Shown: positions 1-59,736 of the stretch, one piece after another | How positions within the stretch are numbered: position 1 is the stretch's first letter | Layout: each line of letters opens with the position of its first letter | Sequence record: PP968062.1 | Strand: one strand, 5' to 3' | DNA: 64,000 bases | Notes under the pieces: generated by a model | What the model saw: only the letters and a program-made list of their open reading frames with translations | Told to the model about the DNA's origin: nothing | Database searches by the model: none | Program-made: the position numbers and the translations under genes

Positions 1-684
1 GGTACACATAACTCCGCTGGTATGTTCTATGACGAAGCCAGTGGCGTTGCCATGTTCGATCCGAACTCTTCTTTGATGCGGCGCCTTAAGAAAGGTGTAC
101 TCTTCATGGAGTTCAAACATCCGGAACCGTTTACAGATCTGATGATCGATGGTCGCGTTGTTCGTCAACCGATGGATGATCGTCAATACCTACAACGTAT
201 TCGTATGATCGACGATAACCGGGTATGTGCACACATCCGTGCTCTGACTATTGTCCCCGGTAAGAATGAGAATGGTAAGACCGTTAAGATGGTCGTAGGC
301 GAAGTTAAGCCTTACGGTCCCTTCGGTCACATTTTCAAAGAGTCGCTGGATAACCCGAGTATCAATACTTATTGCTCCGTACGTTCTATCACTCAAGATG
401 ATGTAATGCGTGGCATCAAGTACACTCGTGAAATCGCCACATGGGACTTCGTAGGTGAAGGCGGTATCTACATCGCTAACAAGTATACCTCTCCTGCACT
501 GGAAAGCTTCTCTGATACTGAAGTCATCATCACTCCCGCTACCCTGTGGAAGATGGAAGACGAAGCTAAGAAGCGTGCTAACATCGGTATGGAATCTGAT
601 CCTAACCTTGATGTTACTGACCTGATCCAACAACTAGGTTGGTCTCGTCGTAAGCCTGTACGTGTACCTGCTTACATGCGATAA
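1..684 (+). CDS. Prohead (head maturation) serine protease, phiKZ gp175 / T4 gp21 family; 5' end lies before the window
   Basis: Frame open from base 1 (GTHNSAGMFYD). Triad-type motifs MEFKHP (His), CSVRS (Ser), TWDFV (Asp). Candidate self-cleavage sites PALE|S and GME|S near the C-terminus. Confidence 0.9.
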   Translation, partial: GTHNSAGMFYDEASGVAMFDPNSSLMRRLKKGVLFMEFKHPEPFTDLMIDGRVVRQPMDDRQYLQRIRMIDDNRVCAHIRALTIVPGKNENGKTVKMVVGEVKPYGPFGHIFKESLDNPSINTYCSVRSITQDDVMRGIKYTREIATWDFVGEGGIYIANKYTSPALESFSDTEVIITPATLWKMEDEAKKRANIGMESDPNLDVTDLIQQLGWSRRKPVRVPAYMR

Positions 685-52307: not shown

Positions 52308-54476
52308 ATGAGTAGCATGTATTTTGGAGTTTACCGTGACGATGTCATGCGACTAGCAAGGTCGGTGATTATCAAGTTTTCTGAAATCGCGAATCAGATT
52401 AATTCCCGGCTTAAAGAAGTCGGTCACGAAGCTGATCCAGCACGACCGGAAACTTGGAAATATTACAAGAACCTTGCTGGTGAATATCATGAAACAGATG
52501 TCATGATGACCGTGCGTTCCGCGGATACTCTTGAAATAATCGATTTCACAAAAGAAAATCTGGCGCTTCACCGCGCTACTGCGCGAGAGTATATTCCGGG
52601 TAGCGTTCTGTATAACAGTCTCGTAAGACAGTTCCCAGAACAGGCCGGTTTGATCACCGGAATCCTATATCCAATTGACATCCAAACGGCAATAGATTCA
52701 AATGATGGGGATATTTTGTACTTTGATCCGAAGTATGTGGAGGATAACGAATACTCGTTCTTCCATCAACTACAATCGTGGGTCAACGTATTTATCACCC
52801 GGTGGTATAACGCTCAGTTTAACTTGACTGACGATCTATACCTTGCAAACTTCCTTGGGCACCTTTATACAAGGTTGCCTGTAGCGATTATGTTGATTCG
52901 TCTACGTAATGCCAAGACTAATGAAGCACACAGTTATCACGTAACCGAGTATCTCGCCTCGCACCAAGGCTTGGATGAATTCATTCCTTATCTCTCTCTG
53001 GAGCAACGCTTGTGGCTCTACCGGAACATTGCCTTCCTGGAACGTAACGCCGGTAAGAAAGAGATTTGGCAACGGCTGGTTAAGAATATTCTGACTCCCC
53101 GCGGTATTCCGCTTATTAGCTTCACCATTGAGCAGAACAGTTCCAAGATGCCTGAACAACATCGACCATCCGTGGACATGGTTAAGCACGACGTTAACTT
53201 CCCGATCGTTCAAGAAGGCCAAGAGACCACTACGGTAGCTGACGTACTGGAACGTGAAGACGATCTAGCCCGTGAGAACCCGTTAGTACGCTTTGATGCT
53301 GAACAAGAGATCACTGATAAGATGGGCTCTGATCAGTACAGTTGGCTTCGTACTAAAGTGCTGGACTCTGAGGTCATTGACCGTTCGAATAGTTCTGTAC
53401 GTTCTCTCATGAGCGTTCTACTTAATGAGTGGTTGCATCTGGCTTCTAGCGACAAATATCGTGCTTATGTTCAGATCCCTAACCCAAGGACCGGCGAGTT
53501 CATGACCATGACTGTAAAGGATGCGTTCATCGTAATGCTTTACACTTATGCCAAAGCTCGTGATATCCCAACGGATAACATTCCTAGTCTTGTGGCCTAT
53601 GAGGTTCTTCGTGACAAGCTTCCGACGTTTGCTGAACTACGTCCTGCTGTAGATAAACGGATCGTTAAAGATAAGTTGATCACAGCTGTACAGGATATGG
53701 TTACTCCGATGGGTAACTATATCTCTACCGAACAGTTCTACTTGGATTGCGTGCGGTTGCATAAGGAATACCTATTGCAATGGGAGATGTATTCGTTCCA
53801 AGAACACCCAGCTGGACGTTCCTATTGCGAGCAACTGGTTAAGTTCCATTACATGCACCGGATGTGTAAATTAGCTCCTCCGAATACTAAGTTCGAAGAC
53901 TACTTCAAGAAGGCGTCGTTTGATATTCTTAATCTGAATAAGACCGAAGCTGAACAAATGTGCATGGACTGTATCAACATTGCAACTGGTTCTAACTTGG
54001 TACGTGTGATTACTCTGGGTGAGGTTCAACGTGAGCTGCTTCGTCTGATGGGTCGTCTGTCCAGCTATCCGCTTCAGTATTTACGTAATGTTAGCTTCAC
54101 TGATTTCCATATCCTCGGTATGGTTGTGCCGCGCGTAGGCGATATCAGTGTAGACGCAGCCGGTAACTATATTTGTAACGTTGCTGTACAGAACGTTAAA
54201 GCTTATCGCACTCAGGCCGGACATACTTACCGCATTGTGGATGACTCGACATCACCGTATGTTGATTATGTTTATTCTCAGTACGACAAGTTCTGGATAA
54301 ATCCATTTGTAGAAGTACGTGATCTCAGTTATGCTAATGCTCACTACTATATCCCTGTTAACGGTGTAAACGTTTCGAACGTGGTTATCGAAACCATTGA
54401 CAATCCGAATACCACTGGTGATCTGGATAACTACAAGAACTCCACTGATCCAGCTTGGCCCAAACTTAAGGAGTAA
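52308..54476 (+). CDS. Baseplate or virion structural protein (722 aa)
   Basis: WKYYKNLAGEYH motif; divergent from the portal as in phiKZ-like genomes. Confidence 0.7.
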   Translation: MSSMYFGVYRDDVMRLARSVIIKFSEIANQINSRLKEVGHEADPARPETWKYYKNLAGEYHETDVMMTVRSADTLEIIDFTKENLALHRATAREYIPGSVLYNSLVRQFPEQAGLITGILYPIDIQTAIDSNDGDILYFDPKYVEDNEYSFFHQLQSWVNVFITRWYNAQFNLTDDLYLANFLGHLYTRLPVAIMLIRLRNAKTNEAHSYHVTEYLASHQGLDEFIPYLSLEQRLWLYRNIAFLERNAGKKEIWQRLVKNILTPRGIPLISFTIEQNSSKMPEQHRPSVDMVKHDVNFPIVQEGQETTTVADVLEREDDLARENPLVRFDAEQEITDKMGSDQYSWLRTKVLDSEVIDRSNSSVRSLMSVLLNEWLHLASSDKYRAYVQIPNPRTGEFMTMTVKDAFIVMLYTYAKARDIPTDNIPSLVAYEVLRDKLPTFAELRPAVDKRIVKDKLITAVQDMVTPMGNYISTEQFYLDCVRLHKEYLLQWEMYSFQEHPAGRSYCEQLVKFHYMHRMCKLAPPNTKFEDYFKKASFDILNLNKTEAEQMCMDCINIATGSNLVRVITLGEVQRELLRLMGRLSSYPLQYLRNVSFTDFHILGMVVPRVGDISVDAAGNYICNVAVQNVKAYRTQAGHTYRIVDDSTSPYVDYVYSQYDKFWINPFVEVRDLSYANAHYYIPVNGVNVSNVVIETIDNPNTTGDLDNYKNSTDPAWPKLKE

Positions 54477-54478
54477 TC

Positions 54479-55357
54479 ATGTACATCACGAGAGACTACC
54501 TCCAGTCTACTCCTTGGACATCCATCATTGACATGATTAATGATGCTTGTTTTACCCAGCTGTTTCCGGGTAGTACCAAGCTTGAGAAGTTCGAACCTTT
54601 GAATGGGACCAAGACTCGTATTGTCATTAGTGTTAATCGCAGTGAGGCTCCCGGCAATCTGTTGCCGGAAGTCCCGCTCGATACTTATACGTACGATAGA
54701 CTGGATCTAACTACGTTCTTCCGTCAAACTCAAGTTCTGGATATTTCCGGGATTGATGTTCCATTCTCCTCGATGGATATCGTAGAGAAGCTATCGGAGT
54801 TGAACAACATTGTTTTTGATGTGGATGACTTCGAACACACTGAGTATAATGTCTTCAATCAAGAGTTCATTCTACGGGCTAACAAAGAGTCTCTACGTTT
54901 CGTGGGGTTCTTAAGAGTACGTCTTATCAATACAATCCGTGTTGATCTTTCTGTACAATCCAAGGTTGAATTCCCTACCGTAGGTAAACCAGACAACGTT
55001 ACTGCTGGTGACGTTACTCTAATCAATGGGACCTACTACATCACTGGTTATGACTTCTCTGCACATAGAGAATACCTACGTCATCAGACTAAGGCTGGTA
55101 CACATCCAGATCCTAAGAAGATGGCAGCTATTCTCGCTGAGGTGACGAAGAAGCCTTGGACTGCGGTAAAGACACCAGCTTCGCACAACATCGCTTATAC
55201 AGAAGAATTCGGGGTATTAAAGTATCGCGTCATTTATAACGGTGTCGTACTTCCACGCTTCACTAAGCGGACTGATATTCAAAACGTTCTAGTCATCGAA
55301 CTGCACAAGACTCTGTGTCAAGATGTGGTTGGTGAAATTCGTATTCACTATAACTAG
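54479..55357 (+). CDS. Virion structural protein (292 aa)
   Basis: YTYDRLDL motif family. Confidence 0.7.
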   Translation: MYITRDYLQSTPWTSIIDMINDACFTQLFPGSTKLEKFEPLNGTKTRIVISVNRSEAPGNLLPEVPLDTYTYDRLDLTTFFRQTQVLDISGIDVPFSSMDIVEKLSELNNIVFDVDDFEHTEYNVFNQEFILRANKESLRFVGFLRVRLINTIRVDLSVQSKVEFPTVGKPDNVTAGDVTLINGTYYITGYDFSAHREYLRHQTKAGTHPDPKKMAAILAEVTKKPWTAVKTPASHNIAYTEEFGVLKYRVIYNGVVLPRFTKRTDIQNVLVIELHKTLCQDVVGEIRIHYN

Positions 55358-55365
55358 GAGTGATT

Positions 55366-55794
55366 ATGCACGTATCAAACATGCGGGTTAAACTACTCCA
55401 GCAGTTTAGTCTACAGAACAAACTAGAACCCGCGATTCGACCTGAAGATGTTATCTGGACAAACATTGAAATCTGGTTAGAGAATGGTAATAACTCAAGA
55501 GCTACCATTCAAGCTCTGGCAAGTAGTAATCATTTCAAAGGACAGCGTACTATCAATTTCAATCGATACAGAATCGAAGAAGCATTGCGTGGCGTTGTTA
55601 TTCCCGGAAAACGTTCTGACTACTCGACTATCCACGATGTAGTTAAAGTACTGCGGGATAAGGTTACTGCACCAGTAGATACCGAAGAATTCCTTGATGG
55701 TCCTCTTGTTGGTAACACGGTTATTCTGAAGCCGACTATTCGCTCCATGGCGTACATTCCTACGTCGCAGATCGAACTAAGCTTCGCTGAATAA
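55366..55794 (+). CDS. Virion structural protein (142 aa)
   Basis: SD aggag; FNRYRI variant of the same domain. Confidence 0.65.
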   Translation: MHVSNMRVKLLQQFSLQNKLEPAIRPEDVIWTNIEIWLENGNNSRATIQALASSNHFKGQRTINFNRYRIEEALRGVVIPGKRSDYSTIHDVVKVLRDKVTAPVDTEEFLDGPLVGNTVILKPTIRSMAYIPTSQIELSFAE

Positions 55795-55871: not shown

Positions 55872-56573
55872 TTACACGAGCGCCACGAAAGTACCGTCTT
55901 TGAAACCGACCTTACACTTAGCTTCATCGTACCACACGTCCACACCCATACGAGCGAGACCTTCGATAACGTACTTGTCGTAGTTACCTTTACCGCGCAT
56001 CACCGACTTCAGTTGGCGGGTCAACATGGTGTGGTTTGTAGACATGAACATACCCGGAACATCCAAGTCTTTCACACGCAGGTTACGCGGCAGCAGAGAC
56101 TCCATGGTGATGTTCAGGAGTTCCATGCGACGCAGGTCTTCGCGGAGAGCGCGGACGTTGTACACCATGGCCAGGCGAATGTCACCGCCGTTGCGGAGAT
56201 GTTCTTCGGTCAGGTGAGGTAGAGTTGCAGTGGGATCGACCAGAAGAGCACGTTCACCGGTGGTGTGTACTACAGGATCGAGGTAGGGATTGTGAACAAC
56301 GTATTCGCCATTGACCCAGCGATACAGATCCAGCGTGGAGGTAACCTTATAAATCATTTCCGGATCACCGCGCAGGGGCAGGTCGTCTACGGACAGTACG
56401 TCGATGGTCATGCTCTCTCCTTTAGCTTTCTGAAGTACAACCGGTTCATCGGCGACGTCGATGATAGTATCGAAGAAATCCGGAGATTGTTCTTCGTCAC
56501 GCAGAGCATTGCCAAATAGCTGGCGATGGGACGGAACGAAGATGGATTTAACAGCGTCGATTACTTGGTTCAT
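55872..56573 (-). CDS. Hypothetical early protein (233 aa)
   Basis: SD aagga; strong codon bias; follows a TATATCAC motif. Confidence 0.75.
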   Translation of the reverse strand: MNQVIDAVKSIFVPSHRQLFGNALRDEEQSPDFFDTIIDVADEPVVLQKAKGESMTIDVLSVDDLPLRGDPEMIYKVTSTLDLYRWVNGEYVVHNPYLDPVVHTTGERALLVDPTATLPHLTEEHLRNGGDIRLAMVYNVRALREDLRRMELLNITMESLLPRNLRVKDLDVPGMFMSTNHTMLTRQLKSVMRGKGNYDKYVIEGLARMGVDVWYDEAKCKVGFKDGTFVALV

Positions 56574-56601: not shown

Positions 56602-56621
56602 TATATCACCTCTGTGATATA
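56602..56621 (-). promoter_or_regulatory. Early promoter variant TATATCAC, part of an inverted repeat
   Basis: tatatcac-ctct-gtgatata; one mismatch to TATATTAC; AT-rich upstream on the - strand. Confidence 0.55.
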
Positions 56622-56625
56622 GGCT

Positions 56626-57165
56626 TTATTTATCTTTAAATACAGGGTTATCGAAATCGTCTTTATAGAGGATGTCGAAACCCACGATATCAGCCACGTG
56701 CTCACGCTCATTCAACTGGTAACGGAAACCAATAGTCAGAGGCAGGAGATCGTACAGGTCGTTCATATCACGTGCCAGGGGACCAGCCGAGGTAATATCC
56801 AGGATCAGTGCGTTTGAGACGTCGATGCCATTACCTTGTCGGATATGCCAGTTATCGAGAGTGGCACATACGCGATTAGCATCAACAACCAGTGCACGGA
56901 GGATCATGTTTTCTGGGGAAGACACTGCTACCTTCGGATGACCCAGTTCAATACCAGACAACAGGAGTTCATTCTTCTTAACGAAGGACGAGTTCTCCCA
57001 GAGGTACAGCTGGCTCAACGTTCGAGCATGTTCTACAACCGCTTCAACACGTCCTTTACCCAATTGAGCCATGTCACGACGAAGACCTTCAACCATGCGC
57101 TGGCGCATCTCTTCAAAAGAGATAGTTACACGAAACTTTGCACTCGGAAGTTTTTCGAATTTCAT
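56626..57165 (-). CDS. Prohead-protease paralog lacking the catalytic Ser (179 aa)
   Basis: IELGHP, VDANRVCA, SAGPL, IGFRY, VGFDIL align in order with 1..684. Confidence 0.75.
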   Translation of the reverse strand: MKFEKLPSAKFRVTISFEEMRQRMVEGLRRDMAQLGKGRVEAVVEHARTLSQLYLWENSSFVKKNELLLSGIELGHPKVAVSSPENMILRALVVDANRVCATLDNWHIRQGNGIDVSNALILDITSAGPLARDMNDLYDLLPLTIGFRYQLNEREHVADIVGFDILYKDDFDNPVFKDK

Positions 57166-57181
57166 TTCATTCTCCTAGAGG

Positions 57182-57210
57182 GACATAAAGCCCCTCTAAT
57201 GAGGGGCTAA
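57182..57210 (-). terminator. Hairpin, conserved-flank family
   Basis: gacataaagcccctc-taat-gaggggcta. Confidence 0.65.
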
Positions 57211-57213
57211 TTA

Positions 57214-57624
57214 TCAATCGGACAATATATCGAACGTGATGATTTCTTTCAGGATACCATCTACGTTCTTAAGGCCACGGACACCCAGACGCATTGGGAT
57301 ACCATTTTTGATCATCGCGCGTATCCGATCATGGAACGGACCGAATGGACGGATATACACATTGAAGCCGATGAGTTTAGCCTTTTCGTGTACTGGATCA
57401 ATACCGATTACTAAAGCGGCACCGTTATTGCAATTAATAGACGTGGCTCGTTTGTAATCTGTTTCGGTGTTGCCTGTCAGTTTCGGATGTCCGTACTCAC
57501 AAGCAATAGTACCATCGCGTACAGCGTTACTGAACTTAGAGCTTTCGTAATCTGTACGCATGTATTCGGGGAGGCGATTCAAAGCGATGAACTCTGTACC
57601 TACTCCATTGTCAAATGACAGCAT
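57214..57624 (-). CDS. Prohead-protease paralog lacking the catalytic Ser (136 aa)
   Basis: CEYGHP, IRPFGPF, LGVRG, IITFDIL; SD gaggag. Confidence 0.75.
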   Translation of the reverse strand: MLSFDNGVGTEFIALNRLPEYMRTDYESSKFSNAVRDGTIACEYGHPKLTGNTETDYKRATSINCNNGAALVIGIDPVHEKAKLIGFNVYIRPFGPFHDRIRAMIKNGIPMRLGVRGLKNVDGILKEIITFDILSD

Positions 57625-57637
57625 GTACTGCTCCTCT

Positions 57638-57669
57638 AAAGAAGCCCCTCCGAAGAGGGGCCTTTATGT
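57638..57669 (-). terminator. Hairpin, conserved-flank family
   Basis: gcccctc-cgaa-gagggg followed by cctttatg. Confidence 0.65.
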
Positions 57670-59736
57670 TTACTTCAGACGTTTCAGCAGAACAGCTTTC
57701 TCAGTCAGACGACCACGGATCACTTCCAGATAAACACCATCCAGAGTAATCAGACGCATGCGGACGTTTGCCAGACCATTTGCAGTTGCACGAGTGATCA
57801 TGCCTTTCAGTACTTCACGAACAGTCGGGTGGGTACCTTCAGATACCAGAACTGCTTTCTCGTTCAGGATGTTCAGAGTAGCCAGTTGTTCCAGAGTCCA
57901 ACCTACCTGGAAGTTGGTGAACTGGTCGGCTACGCCACGGGTGTTGTCTACTTCGGCCATAGTTACGGCACGGGAGATGATCTGCGCAGCACAAGCCTTC
58001 ACGATTTGCAGAATGTTGGAACCTTTCTTGGTGTTGATGTAATCCAGCAGCTCACCGATGTCATGAGCGAAGTCGTCGATGGTGATGTTCATCGACAGGC
58101 TATCGGCCAGGAAGTCATTGATGGACTTGGTCAGACGATCATTCAAGAAGCGGAAGTAACGAATACTCAGATGACCATTGGTTACCAGTTCTTTCAGTTC
58201 AGTTGCTACGCCGATCAGATCGGTATAGTTAACTAGCTGGCTCAGCTGGTCGAAGGTCTCATCGCTAACGTCCATGTGGTGAACGTTCATCGATTTGTAT
58301 TCATGAGCAGGAATCTCCACGCTCATGGATTCTTCGTCATCTTCGATACCCAGTAGTTCACGCATTGCTGCGCGTACTTCGGATTCGACTTCCAGATCAG
58401 TTGCACCCATGAACACTTGGTTGTCCAGAACTACCGGACGACTTGCTACGGCAGCAAGGCCACCATCTTGCACCAGGCTGGCCACTTCCTCACTAGCCAG
58501 TGCATTGCCACCAATAGTGGAGACGGGAGTTTGTGCAGCGTATACAACGCCGTTAGGACGATATTCACGACGACGCAGGTCATCGTTCAGTTCATGCTTC
58601 AGGTATTCCATTTGCGGGTTCCATTCAACGAATTTCTCTTTTACCACGCCATCCGGGAAACGGACGTAGAAGCGGCAGTAGTGTTCCGGATCAACCAGAG
58701 CACTGTACGGATCTTCGTCACCGACGGTACGTTCCCAATCAACCTGATGTGCCGGTTTGATCAGAACGCCACCGGGATTATGGATCTCATCATACGGACG
58801 GGCGATGTCTACACGGAAACCGGTGGGTTGGTAATACATCGGATCGATCATTACCTGACTGACATCGATCGGTGCCGGCAAATCGGTATCTTCAATTACA
58901 GCAGGTTGCCGCGCTTGAGTCTGGGGTTGTTGAGTGTACATCGGTTGTTGCTCCTGGTTATTGGAGTAGCCACCGTAGATATCAGTACTGACCTCTTCTT
59001 TCGGCATCAAAGGAGCCTGAGAAGGAGTATCATCGTAATACGAACTGGTGGTGCTCGACGTGGTGTTGTTTGTAGTGGTCTGATAGGTGCCAGCCGGCTG
59101 TGCGAACTGTGCCTGAGACGTGGTAGCGAACTGACCCATGTTACCCGGATTGATCGGAGGCAGGTTGCCTGCCATCTGGATACCATTGCCCTGTTGGTAC
59201 ATACCCATCTGCTGTTGTTGCTGCGGACGGTAGTTACCAGACTTGTACGCTTGGATGTCTTGCAGGATCTGCTGGTACATGCCTTGGGCAGTTTGCAGAC
59301 CTTGGAACATGTGCTGAGGAACAGCACCCATTTGTACTAGAGCCGGATAAGATGCTACGCACTGACCCAGGAAGGCTTCGTACATACGCTGAGCGCCCCT
59401 AGGCACTGCATCAGTTTGACTATAGTTCTTGCAGACGCACAGGAACTCGACGAAGTCAACGAGATGTTGACACCACTGCTGGAAGATCTGGTTTTGGAAC
59501 CAGTTCGAGGACAGCAGGTTGTAGGCAAAGATGTGGAGGTTACCTTTGCCAACCGACGATTGTGCAAGCCCACGGAACAGACCAACTGCCTGGAGTACCA
59601 GCTGTTGGTTATTCATCAGGTTCTGGCTAAGTTGGAGTTGAGGTACCCGATCATTACCAGCCGGCAGATTACCATTGAAGGTGCTCTGATCGACTTGTTG
59701 GCAGGAGACCGGGAGTTGAGCTTGTTGGTTGTACAT
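57670..59736 (-). CDS. Conserved hypothetical protein with Q/T-rich disordered linker (688 aa)
   Basis: Long ORF behind the nvRNAP subunit; SD agga; strong codon bias. Confidence 0.8.
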   Translation of the reverse strand: MYNQQAQLPVSCQQVDQSTFNGNLPAGNDRVPQLQLSQNLMNNQQLVLQAVGLFRGLAQSSVGKGNLHIFAYNLLSSNWFQNQIFQQWCQHLVDFVEFLCVCKNYSQTDAVPRGAQRMYEAFLGQCVASYPALVQMGAVPQHMFQGLQTAQGMYQQILQDIQAYKSGNYRPQQQQQMGMYQQGNGIQMAGNLPPINPGNMGQFATTSQAQFAQPAGTYQTTTNNTTSSTTSSYYDDTPSQAPLMPKEEVSTDIYGGYSNNQEQQPMYTQQPQTQARQPAVIEDTDLPAPIDVSQVMIDPMYYQPTGFRVDIARPYDEIHNPGGVLIKPAHQVDWERTVGDEDPYSALVDPEHYCRFYVRFPDGVVKEKFVEWNPQMEYLKHELNDDLRRREYRPNGVVYAAQTPVSTIGGNALASEEVASLVQDGGLAAVASRPVVLDNQVFMGATDLEVESEVRAAMRELLGIEDDEESMSVEIPAHEYKSMNVHHMDVSDETFDQLSQLVNYTDLIGVATELKELVTNGHLSIRYFRFLNDRLTKSINDFLADSLSMNITIDDFAHDIGELLDYINTKKGSNILQIVKACAAQIISRAVTMAEVDNTRGVADQFTNFQVGWTLEQLATLNILNEKAVLVSEGTHPTVREVLKGMITRATANGLANVRMRLITLDGVYLEVIRGRLTEKAVLLKRLK

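What the first reader, a model, noticed from the sequence alone, without database searches (positions are those of the whole stretch)
56626..57624. Two tandem pseudo-protease paralogs of the prohead protease (catalytic Ser to Gly)
Seen in sequence: both ORFs align motif by motif with the protease at 1..684. MEFKHP matches IELGHP and CEYGHP; IDDNRVCA matches VDANRVCA; KPYGPF matches SAGPL and RPFGPF; CSVRS matches IGFRY and LGVRG; ATWDFV matches VGFDIL and ITFDIL. His and Asp are kept, but the nucleophile Ser position is Gly in both, and both lack the C-terminal self-cleaved tail. They sit about 56 kb away, next to early genes. Established: T4 gp21/phiKZ gp175 proteases use a His-Ser-Asp triad, and prohead proteases have been reported as triggers of CBASS immunity. 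Inference: inactive copies may delay head maturation, act as substrate-binding adaptors, or decoy host sensors.
Basis: partly seen in the sequence, partly recalled or inferred. Interest (0 to 1): 0.75.

Follow-up and report, generated by a model that had tools for sequence, protein, structure and literature searches.

The report
Two inactive prohead-protease copies in tandem
A giant Pseudomonas phage carries, next to each other, two short, intact, well-conserved copies of its own head-maturation protease that have lost the cutting residue; short copies of this kind were already described in related giant phages in 2017, and what they do is still unknown.

Summary
The window is Pseudomonas phage HPP-Temi, a phiKZ-like jumbo phage. 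ORF B (57214-57624, minus strand, 136 aa) and ORF A (56626-57165, minus strand, 179 aa) are diverged, truncated paralogs of the S80 prohead protease, whose 3' part lies at window 1-684. Profile-profile E-values are 1e-16 (B family vs proteases) and 2e-13 (A family vs B family). Mapped through the published SPN3US gp245 triad, both keep His and Asp, have Gly at the Ser nucleophile, and lack the C-terminal tail. Both are intact in seven related phages, with dN/dS of 0.06-0.09, so they are not decaying.

The kind is already known. Ali et al. 2017 described 'cryptic' truncated protease paralogs in giant phages and listed PhiPA3 gp143, which is 44% identical to ORF B. PHROG 7478 holds the family, and GenBank labels both ORFs 'head maturation protease'. 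Three things are new. ORF A is a second, more divergent subtype with a helical insertion. The A/B pair recurs in a fixed genomic slot that is empty in phiKZ. The Gly is not invariant: none of 15 short paralogs has a full triad.

Function is untested. My best guess is a non-cleaving binder that regulates or chaperones head maturation outside the prohead.

The parts
57214..57624 (-). ORF B: 136-aa truncated, non-catalytic S80 prohead-protease paralog (H46 / G114 / D132). It is the ortholog of PhiPA3 gp143.
   Evidence: ORF. Pfam S80 E 2e-5. phrog_7478. hhalign 98.8% against S80 proteases. 44% identical to PhiPA3 gp143. AF2 model pLDDT 94.2. BFVD fold hits to prohead proteases. dN/dS 0.06.
56626..57165 (-). 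ORF A: 179-aa second, more divergent paralog (H76 / G146 / D164). It carries an extra helical segment at about residues 17-65 before the protease-like core. It is the ortholog of PhiPA3 gp142.
   Evidence: ORF. phrog_7478 E 2e-10. hhalign A family vs B family 98.0%, E 2.4e-13. 32% identical to PhiPA3 gp142. AF2 model pLDDT 83.7. dN/dS 0.085.
1..684 (+). 3' part (last 227 codons plus stop) of the true S80 prohead protease gene. Catalytic His, Ser and Asp codons lie at window 118-120, 376-378 and 445-447. The first 50 codons are outside the window.
   Evidence: Pfam Peptidase_S80 E 1.8e-75. Full gene at PP968062.1 123851-124684, 277 aa. Triad mapped from SPN3US gp245.
57283..57285 (-). Gly114 codon of ORF B, aligned to the nucleophile Ser of the protease.
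   Evidence: Alignment A2 and mapping. hhalign. SPN3US gp117 S126 aligns to the same column. DNA read.
56728..56730 (-). Gly146 codon of ORF A, aligned to the nucleophile Ser of the protease.
   Evidence: DNA read.
57643..57662 (-). GC-rich hairpin followed by a T-rich run, between the gp124-like gene and ORF B (terminator-like).
   Evidence: Conserved with compensatory stem changes in 7 phages.
57184..57208 (-). GC-rich hairpin between ORF B and ORF A, directly followed by a conserved TATG about 20 nt before the ORF A start codon.
   Evidence: TATG is the phiKZ late-promoter core, necessary but not sufficient (PMC4666361).
56602..56621 (-). AT-rich hairpin between ORF A and the gp125-like gene.
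57670..59736 (-). Upstream flank of the slot: homolog of phiKZ gp124 (688 aa, function unknown).
   Evidence: phrog_15010. PA1C annotation 'similar to PHIKZ124'.
55872..56573 (-). Downstream flank of the slot: homolog of phiKZ gp125 (233 aa, function unknown).
   Evidence: phrog_14839. PA1C annotation 'similar to PHIKZ125'. Used as the synteny anchor.

Best explanation
ORF A and ORF B are two intact, expressed-looking paralogs of the phage's own S80 (phiKZ gp175-type) prohead protease. They are under purifying selection.

They keep the central core of the protease fold. ORF B lacks the first ~39 residues of the protease. Both lack the last ~78 residues, the self-cleaved tail thought to carry the enzyme into the prohead. 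Both have Gly where the nucleophile Ser should be, so they cannot act as serine proteases. All of this is shown here.

They belong to the family of short 'cryptic protease' paralogs already described in giant phages: SPN3US gp117, PhiPA3 gp143 and 201phi2-1 gp206.

The rest is inferred. Five residues stay invariant in all 15 short paralogs sampled (Glu 3 residues before the His position, Arg59, Gly95, Arg116 two residues after the Ser position, and Asp132), while the catalytic His and Ser positions drift. From this I infer that the peptide-binding surface is kept and the chemistry is lost. The proteins most likely act as non-cleaving binders, probably as an A-B pair. They would hold either the protease precursor or head proteins carrying its cleavage motif, outside the prohead. 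That would tune or chaperone head maturation in the lineages that carry them.
For: Homology:
- Pfam and PHROG hits.
- hhalign E 1e-16 and 2e-13.
- A genome-wide HMM scan finds only the protease, A and B.
- The family HMM hits SPN3US gp117 at E 5.6e-13, and its published S126 and D144 fall on the same columns as G114 and D132 of ORF B.

Fold:
- AF2 pLDDT is 94.2 for B and 83.7 for A.
- BFVD hits to 'Prohead core protein serine protease' and 'Peptidase U9, T4 prohead protease' have TMq 0.6-0.7 and E 1e-5 to 1e-4.

Loss of catalysis:
- Ser to Gly in both ORFs.
- None of 15 short paralogs has His, Ser and Asp together.

Selection:
- dN/dS is 0.06 (B) and 0.085 (A), against 0.10 and 0.04 for the flanking genes. 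All ORFs are intact in 7 genomes.

Conserved non-catalytic residues:
- E43, R59, G95, R116 and D132 are invariant in 15 of 15, and are also conserved in the four true proteases aligned.

Pairing:
- A-type and B-type genes are adjacent in Pawinskivirus-like phages, PhiPA3 and metagenome contig L017, and probably in L018.

Likely not in the particle:
- There is no C-terminal tail. [quoted passage not shown]
- 201phi2-1 gp205, gp206 and gp210 carry no 'identified by mass spectrometry' flag, whereas their neighbours do.
Against: - No experiment or expression data bear on these genes or their orthologs. No paper found assigns them a function.
- The five invariant charged or Gly residues could be a structural core rather than a binding groove.
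- The genes are accessory. The slot is empty in phiKZ-type phages, which assemble heads without them.
- One relative (P0010) sits among nucleotide-metabolism genes, not head genes.
- The paralogs diverge much faster between genera than the protease does: about 20-44% identity against 58-73%. This also fits a host-directed role.
- Foldseek found no solved structure in the PDB.
Confidence: 0.4

Rival explanations
1. Immune decoy or shield. Some CBASS cyclases are switched on when a phage prohead protease cuts an exposed activation loop. A cytoplasmic, catalytically dead copy of the protease could bind such loops, or other host sensors of the protease, without cutting them. That would mask the real protease's signature.
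For: - Prohead proteases activate CD-NTases by loop cleavage (PMC12991175). Protease mutations allow escape from type I CBASS (title and abstract).
- The paralogs are accessory and vary in copy number: none in the phiKZ-type slot, 2 in HPP-Temi, at least 2 in 201phi2-1, 3 short ones in Phabio.
- They diverge fast between genera. This is a pattern common for host-interaction genes.
- Without the prohead-targeting tail they would stay in the cytoplasm.
Against: - There is no direct evidence.
- No PADLOC or NCBIfam hit.
- Within the genus the genes are under strong purifying selection, with no sign of diversifying change.
- The fixed position between conserved morphogenesis-region genes, and the pairing of A with B, do not point to a defence island.
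- It is not known whether the hosts' CBASS types sense this protease family.
Confidence: 0.1
2. Repurposed fold with an unrelated job. The protease core has been recruited as a scaffold for something that has nothing to do with protease substrates. Examples would be an oligomeric structural or assembly factor, or a binder of nucleic acid or of host machinery. The conserved residues would then only hold the fold together.
For: - Catalytic positions drift freely.
- ORF A has gained a ~40-residue helical insertion.
- One relative lies among RNR, dCMP deaminase, DHFR and helicase genes.
- The flanking gp124-like and gp125-like genes have no known function.
Against: - Exactly the residues conserved in the true proteases are the ones that stay invariant in all 15 paralogs. 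Pure scaffold reuse would not obviously require this.
- The only fold relatives found are prohead proteases and their short paralogs.
Confidence: 0.25
3. Still an enzyme. Another nucleophile (a nearby Ser or Cys, for example the Cys five residues before the His in most B-type proteins) or another chemistry takes over, so the proteins remain hydrolases.
For: His and Asp are kept in the HPP-Temi copies. A Cys precedes the His motif in 7 of the 9 B-type sequences.
Against: - The His itself is replaced in 6 of 15 family members, and no alternative nucleophile column is conserved across the family.
- The A-type orthologs read H/G/D, S/S/D and T/D/D.
- The geometry of the pocket could not be checked, because model coordinates are not exposed.
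Confidence: 0.05
4. Decaying remnants of a protease gene duplication with no function.
For: They are truncated at both ends relative to the protease and have lost the nucleophile. Ali et al. 2017 called such genes a potential 'protease remnant'.
Against: - Intact in all 7 genomes, with dN/dS 0.06-0.09 at dS 0.2-2.
- Orthologs are retained across genera at 32-44% identity, with the same length for B.
- Each gene has its own ribosome-binding site and flanking hairpins.
- The models are confidently folded.
Confidence: 0.03

Closest known systems
Truncated 'cryptic protease' paralogs of giant phages (SPN3US gp117, PhiPA3 gp143, 201phi2-1 gp206; Ali et al. 2017, PMC5694885; PHROG 7478)
   Same: - Short (about 125-180 aa) second copy of the S80 prohead protease core in a phiKZ-like genome that also has a full protease.
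- C-terminal tail missing and triad incomplete.
- ORF B is 44% identical to PhiPA3 gp143.
- The family HMM hits gp117 at E 5.6e-13, with the published S126 and D144 on the same columns.
- Both ORFs hit phrog_7478.
   Different: - gp117 keeps Ser and Asp and lacks the His. The HPP-Temi copies keep His and Asp and lack the Ser.
- ORF A (the PhiPA3 gp142 type, with a helical insertion) was not listed in that paper.
- The recurrent A/B pair in the gp124-gp125 slot was not described there.
Peptidase S80, phiKZ gp175 / SPN3US gp245 prohead protease (Pfam PF20034)
   Same: - Same fold core and same conserved motifs around the His, the Gly-Pro loop, the Ser-x-Arg strand and the Asp strand.
- A gene of the same genome (window 1-684).
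   Different: - No nucleophile Ser.
- ORF B lacks the first ~39 residues.
- Both lack the ~78-residue self-cleaved C-terminal region.
- Their 201phi2-1 homologs are not flagged as virion proteins, whereas the 201phi2-1 protease gp268 is.
T4 gp21 (Peptidase U9) and the herpesvirus assemblin-type protease fold
   Same: Predicted structures annotated 'Peptidase U9, T4 prohead protease' and 'Prohead core protein serine protease' match the ORF B model with TMq 0.61-0.70 and E 3e-5 to 5e-4. Ali et al. relate S80 to T4 gp21 by HHsearch.
   Different: Neither sequence search nor Foldseek against solved structures returned T4 gp21 or any assemblin. The link to a solved structure therefore remains indirect.
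Pseudoenzymes that regulate their active paralogs (general concept; established knowledge, not tested here)
   Same: A catalytically dead paralog under purifying selection, encoded alongside the active enzyme.
   Different: No interaction with the active protease has been shown. This is an analogy only.

Membership tests
Peptidase S80 (phiKZ gp175 type, Pfam PF20034) | Significant profile similarity to the S80 domain | tested here: met
   ORF B: Pfam 24.3 bits against a cut-off of 23.4; hhalign 98.8%, E 1e-16. ORF A: no Pfam hit and only 88% directly, but 98.0%, E 2e-13 to the B family and phrog_7478 E 2e-10.
Peptidase S80 (phiKZ gp175 type, Pfam PF20034) | Complete catalytic triad His-Ser-Asp | tested here: not met
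   The Ser column is Gly in both: G114 in B and G146 in A. His and Asp are present.
Peptidase S80 (phiKZ gp175 type, Pfam PF20034) | C-terminal region removed by self-cleavage and inferred to target the enzyme into the prohead | tested here: not met
   Both ORFs end 4-15 residues after the Asp. The protease continues for about 78 residues. The role of the tail is taken from PMC5694885.
Peptidase S80 (phiKZ gp175 type, Pfam PF20034) | Proteolytic activity on head proteins at S/A/G-X-E motifs | not testable with these tools
   This needs biochemistry. The cleavage motif is taken from PMC5694885.
Short 'cryptic protease' paralogs of giant phages (Ali et al. 2017; PHROG 7478) | Homology to named members (PhiPA3 gp143, 201phi2-1 gp206, SPN3US gp117) | tested here: met
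   - B vs PhiPA3 gp143: 44% identity, E 9e-36.
- B-family HMM vs 201phi2-1 gp206: E 1.4e-7.
- Family HMM vs SPN3US gp117: E 5.6e-13.
- Both ORFs hit phrog_7478.
Short 'cryptic protease' paralogs of giant phages (Ali et al. 2017; PHROG 7478) | Truncated relative to the protease, and encoded in addition to a full-length protease in the same genome | tested here: met
   136 and 179 aa against 277 aa. The genome holds exactly one full protease and these two short copies.
Short 'cryptic protease' paralogs of giant phages (Ali et al. 2017; PHROG 7478) | Incomplete catalytic triad | tested here: met
   0 of 15 short paralogs has His, Ser and Asp together. gp117 reads A55/S126/D144.
T4 gp21 / assemblin-type prohead protease fold | Structural match to the fold | tested here: inconclusive
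   Met against predicted viral structures: TMq 0.6-0.7 to annotated T4-type prohead proteases. Not met against solved structures: no PDB hit with E <= 1e-3 for either model.

The most novel reading that the evidence does not exclude
The dead protease copies are counter-sensors. They stay in the cytoplasm, bind the host immune loops (for example CBASS CD-NTase activation loops) or other sensors that recognise the prohead protease, and block them without cutting. This would make them a new class of anti-defence protein, derived from the very enzyme that the host uses as an alarm signal.
Probability: 0.08. Interest if true: 0.85.

Novelty: new member of a known kind. Interest (0 to 1): 0.3.

Why it matters
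Prohead proteases are essential and conserved, and bacterial CBASS immunity is now known to sense them. A selected, catalytically dead copy of such an enzyme is a natural candidate for a regulator of capsid maturation or for a mask against that sensing.

The existence of these copies in giant phages has been in print since 2017, and their function has remained open.

This analysis adds:
- a second subtype (ORF A / PhiPA3 gp142);
- a recurrent A/B gene pair in a defined slot that is empty in phiKZ;
- proof of purifying selection;
- the pattern that every member lacks a full triad while five other protease-conserved residues never change.

This narrows the question to 'what do they bind?'. It does not open a new field.

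Tried and rejected
- Pairwise BLASTP of A, B and the protease gave only E of about 0.01. Profiles were needed.
- Sequence searches of the PDB with the protease and with the B alignment returned nothing relevant.
- Foldseek of both models against the PDB gave no hit with E <= 1e-3. T4 gp21 was the protein I had in mind and it did not come back. Among the insignificant hits for A were Hcp and tube-like chains; I draw nothing from them.
- Word-indexed protein searches found only close relatives.
- The exhaustive representative search gave 6 true relatives and 1 false positive, the repeat protein P0012.
- 201phi2-1 gp205, Phabio gp192 and Psa21 gp175/gp176 occupy the same slot, but none reached significance with my HMMs. 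I do not count them as members.
- NCBIfam and PADLOC gave no hits.
- Thomas & Black 2013 and Thomas et al. 2012, the primary sources for the gp175 catalytic residues, are not held. I used the triad given for SPN3US gp245 in PMC5694885 instead.
- Sigma-70 promoter and terminator scans were at background level.
- Model coordinates are not exposed, so I could not inspect the pocket geometry or test an alternative nucleophile.
- The decaying-pseudogene idea was rejected on dN/dS.
Full report
**Identity of the window.** The region is 100% identical to Pseudomonas phage HPP-Temi (PP968062.1, genus Pawinskivirus, 302.7 kb). This is a phiKZ-like, nucleus-forming jumbo phage: the record annotates a nuclear shell protein and tubulin PhuZ. 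Window position 1 is record position 124001. ORF A (56626-57165, minus strand, 179 aa) and ORF B (57214-57624, minus strand, 136 aa) are annotated there as 'head maturation protease', as is the true protease. The window holds only the last 227 codons of the protease (window 1-684). The ATG at position 22 is internal; the full protein has 277 residues.

- The protease is a clear Peptidase_S80 (Pfam E 1.8e-75).
- ORF B reaches the same Pfam family just above its cut-off (24.3 against 23.4 bits). ORF A does not.
- Both ORFs hit PHROG 7478, a 147-position family labelled 'head maturation protease'.
- Pairwise BLASTP is only marginal.
- Profile-profile comparison is decisive. The B family against four S80 proteases gives 98.8% probability, E 1.1e-16, over 129 columns. 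The A family against the B family gives 98.0%, E 2.4e-13. The A family against the proteases directly gives 88%, E 3e-6, over 61 columns.
- In an HMM scan of all 2149 six-frame ORF segments of the whole HPP-Temi genome, only the protease, A and B score; every other hit has E >= 1. So the genome has one protease and exactly two short paralogs.

**Catalytic residues.** Ali et al. 2017 give the triad of the SPN3US protease gp245 as H77, S153 and D178, aligned to the T4 gp21 triad (PMC5694885). I carried these positions through an alignment of four proteases and 17 slot ORFs.
- The HPP-Temi protease has H90/S176/D199.
- ORF B has H46/G114/D132.
- ORF A has H76/G146/D164.

The same columns are recovered by hhalign and by aligning SPN3US gp117 to my family HMM. 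The gp117 residues S126 and D144 named in the paper fall on G114 and D132 of ORF B, and gp117 has Ala at the His column. ORF B aligns to protease residues 40-203. Both ORFs stop a few residues after the Asp, so the ~78-residue C-terminal region is absent.

**The Gly is not a family invariant.** Counts are over 15 short paralogs.
- The His column reads H9, C2, M1, T1, E1, S1.
- The Ser column reads G9, S3, D2, K1.
- The Asp column is D in all 15.
- None of the 15 has all three catalytic residues.

The three available full-length A-type lineages read H/G/D (Pawinskivirus-like), S/S/D (metagenome contig L017) and T/D/D (PhiPA3 gp142). Five positions are invariant in all 15 and are also conserved in the four true proteases aligned: Glu 3 residues before the His position, Arg59, Gly95, Arg116 two residues after the Ser position, and Asp132.

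**Fold.**
- AlphaFold2 gives confident models: pLDDT 94.2 for B and 83.7 for A.
- A has the same strand and helix order as B, plus an extra helical segment at about residues 17-65.
- Against predicted viral structures (BFVD), the B model matches other short proteins of giant phages: three in Phabio, 201phi2-1 gp206 and gp210, and proteins of Psa21 and of Erwinia, Yersinia and Klebsiella phages.
- It also matches full-length proteins annotated 'Prohead core protein serine protease' and 'Peptidase U9, T4 prohead protease', with TMq 0.6-0.7.
- Against solved structures, neither model gave any hit with E <= 1e-3, and sequence searches of the PDB were empty.

The prohead-protease fold is supported, but not through a solved structure.

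**Selection.** In seven related phages (HPP-Temi, PA1C, PS119XW, BRkr, HHBS36_1, phiHQ, phiLBG22), both ORFs are intact and of constant length. Nei-Gojobori dN/dS is 0.06 for B and 0.085 for A, against 0.10 and 0.04 for the two flanking genes. Several pairs are saturated at synonymous sites. The HPP-Temi/PA1C pair is not (dS 0.21 for B, 0.74 for A), and it gives 0.06 and 0.09. These are working genes, not remnants. Between genera they change much faster than the protease does. B is 44% and A is 32% identical to their PhiPA3 orthologs, and about 20% to the 201phi2-1 and Phabio relatives. The protease is 58-73% identical across the same range of phages.

**Distribution and synteny.** The pair sits between homologs of phiKZ gp124 and gp125, downstream of a non-virion RNA polymerase subunit and about 6 kb from the major head protein gene. 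The same slot has different contents in different phages.
- PhiPA3: gp142 (A type) and gp143 (B type).
- 201phi2-1: gp205 and gp206. gp206 is a member; a further member, gp210, lies three genes beyond the slot.
- Phabio: gp192 and gp193; gp193 is a member.
- Psa21: two small genes, not detectably related.
- phiKZ-type phage KTN4: no gene in the slot.
- Metagenome contig L017: the same polymerase, gp124-like, B, A, gp125-like order.
- Short contig L018: a B type followed by a cut ORF that weakly matches the A profile.
- Contigs L019 and L020 (relative P0010): a single copy among nucleotide-metabolism genes.

The order is B then A in Pawinskivirus-like phages and in L017, but A then B in PhiPA3. 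The A type was found only next to a B type, and only in these lineages, even in a 5.8-billion-protein search.

**Expression signals.** Each of the three intergenic gaps holds a hairpin that is conserved in seven phages, with compensatory stem changes. Each ORF has its own Shine-Dalgarno-like sequence. A TATG is conserved directly after the hairpin between B and A. TATG is the core of phiKZ late promoters, but it is necessary and not sufficient, and it is frequent in the genome. The non-virion polymerase subunits are early gene products in phiKZ (PMC4666361). Timing therefore cannot be decided from sequence, and 'next to early genes' is only partly right.

**What is already known.** Ali et al. 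[quoted passage not shown] They listed SPN3US gp117, homologs in Erwinia phages (two copies in some), 201phi2-1 gp206 (145 aa) and PhiPA3 gp143 (136 aa). They discussed it as a possible remnant of a protease-gene truncation followed by replacement. I found no later paper that assigns a function.

**Mechanism.**
- Shown: protease-core fold, no nucleophile, no targeting tail, strong purifying selection, recurrent pairing, accessory distribution.
- Inferred: the residues the paralogs never change are the ones shared with the true enzyme, while the catalytic His and Ser drift. The most economical reading is a retained binding surface without chemistry. On that reading the proteins are non-cleaving binders, probably an A-B pair. 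They would act outside the prohead on the protease precursor or on proteins carrying its cleavage motif.
- Confidence: about 0.9 that they are non-catalytic S80 paralogs of the known 'cryptic protease' kind; about 0.35 for the binder/regulator mechanism. The overall figure of 0.4 reflects the mechanism.
- Rivals: an unrelated function on a reused fold (0.25); an immune decoy against protease-sensing defence such as CBASS (0.1; the premise is supported by PMC12991175); residual enzymatic activity (0.05); decay (0.03, contradicted).

**Verdict.** The kind is already published and already annotated in the source record. ORF B is an ortholog of a listed member. ORF A, the pairing in a defined slot, the selection data and the 'no complete triad anywhere' pattern are modest additions. 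Interest is moderate to low unless the decoy reading proves true.

Noticed in passing
window 56626-57624, compared with L003:3477-4411 (PhiPA3): The order of the two paralogs relative to the conserved flanks is B then A in Pawinskivirus-like phages and in metagenome contig L017, but A then B in PhiPA3 (gp142, gp143). In PhiPA3 the two genes are only 14 nt apart with no hairpin between them.
   Followed up: partly
window 57643-57662, 57189-57208, 56602-56621: Each gene of this cluster is followed by a hairpin conserved in seven phages with compensatory stem changes; in one case the loop is inverted. A TATG (the phiKZ late-promoter core) is conserved right after the hairpin upstream of ORF A.
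   Followed up: partly
L004:5322-5699 (201phi2-1 gp210) and BFVD hits: Other chimalliviruses carry further short protease-like copies outside the gp124-gp125 slot: 201phi2-1 gp210 lies beside an acetyltransferase, and Phabio has three short copies. HPP-Temi has none beyond A and B.
   Followed up: partly
L019:5001-5411 and L020:1699-2109 (metagenome contigs with P0010): A single 136-aa family member (Met at the His position, Gly at the Ser position) sits among ribonucleotide reductase, dCMP deaminase, DHFR and DnaB-like genes. This context is unlike the head-gene region.
   Followed up: no
L003:1321-3427 (PhiPA3 gp140 / gp141): In the PhiPA3 record the gp124-like gene is annotated as a short ORF (gp140) overlapped by a long opposite-strand ORF (gp141), whereas relatives have one ~690-aa gene. 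It is probably an annotation or sequence issue; I did not examine it.
   Followed up: no
window 54470-55794 (+), with phiKZ gp126/gp127 homologs in related loci: The virion structural genes just beyond the gp125-like gene correspond to phiKZ gp126/gp127. A 2026 Goslar preprint assigns these to the chimallivirus-specific DUF7941 family of abundant virion proteins.
   Followed up: no
PDB fold search of the ORF A model: Among the non-significant hits (E about 1) were several Hcp and contractile-injection tube or baseplate chains. They are too weak to interpret.
   Followed up: no
P0012: The only non-family hit of the exhaustive profile search is a 585-aa protein made of about 50-residue tandem repeats. 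It is a false positive caused by repetition.
   Followed up: yes
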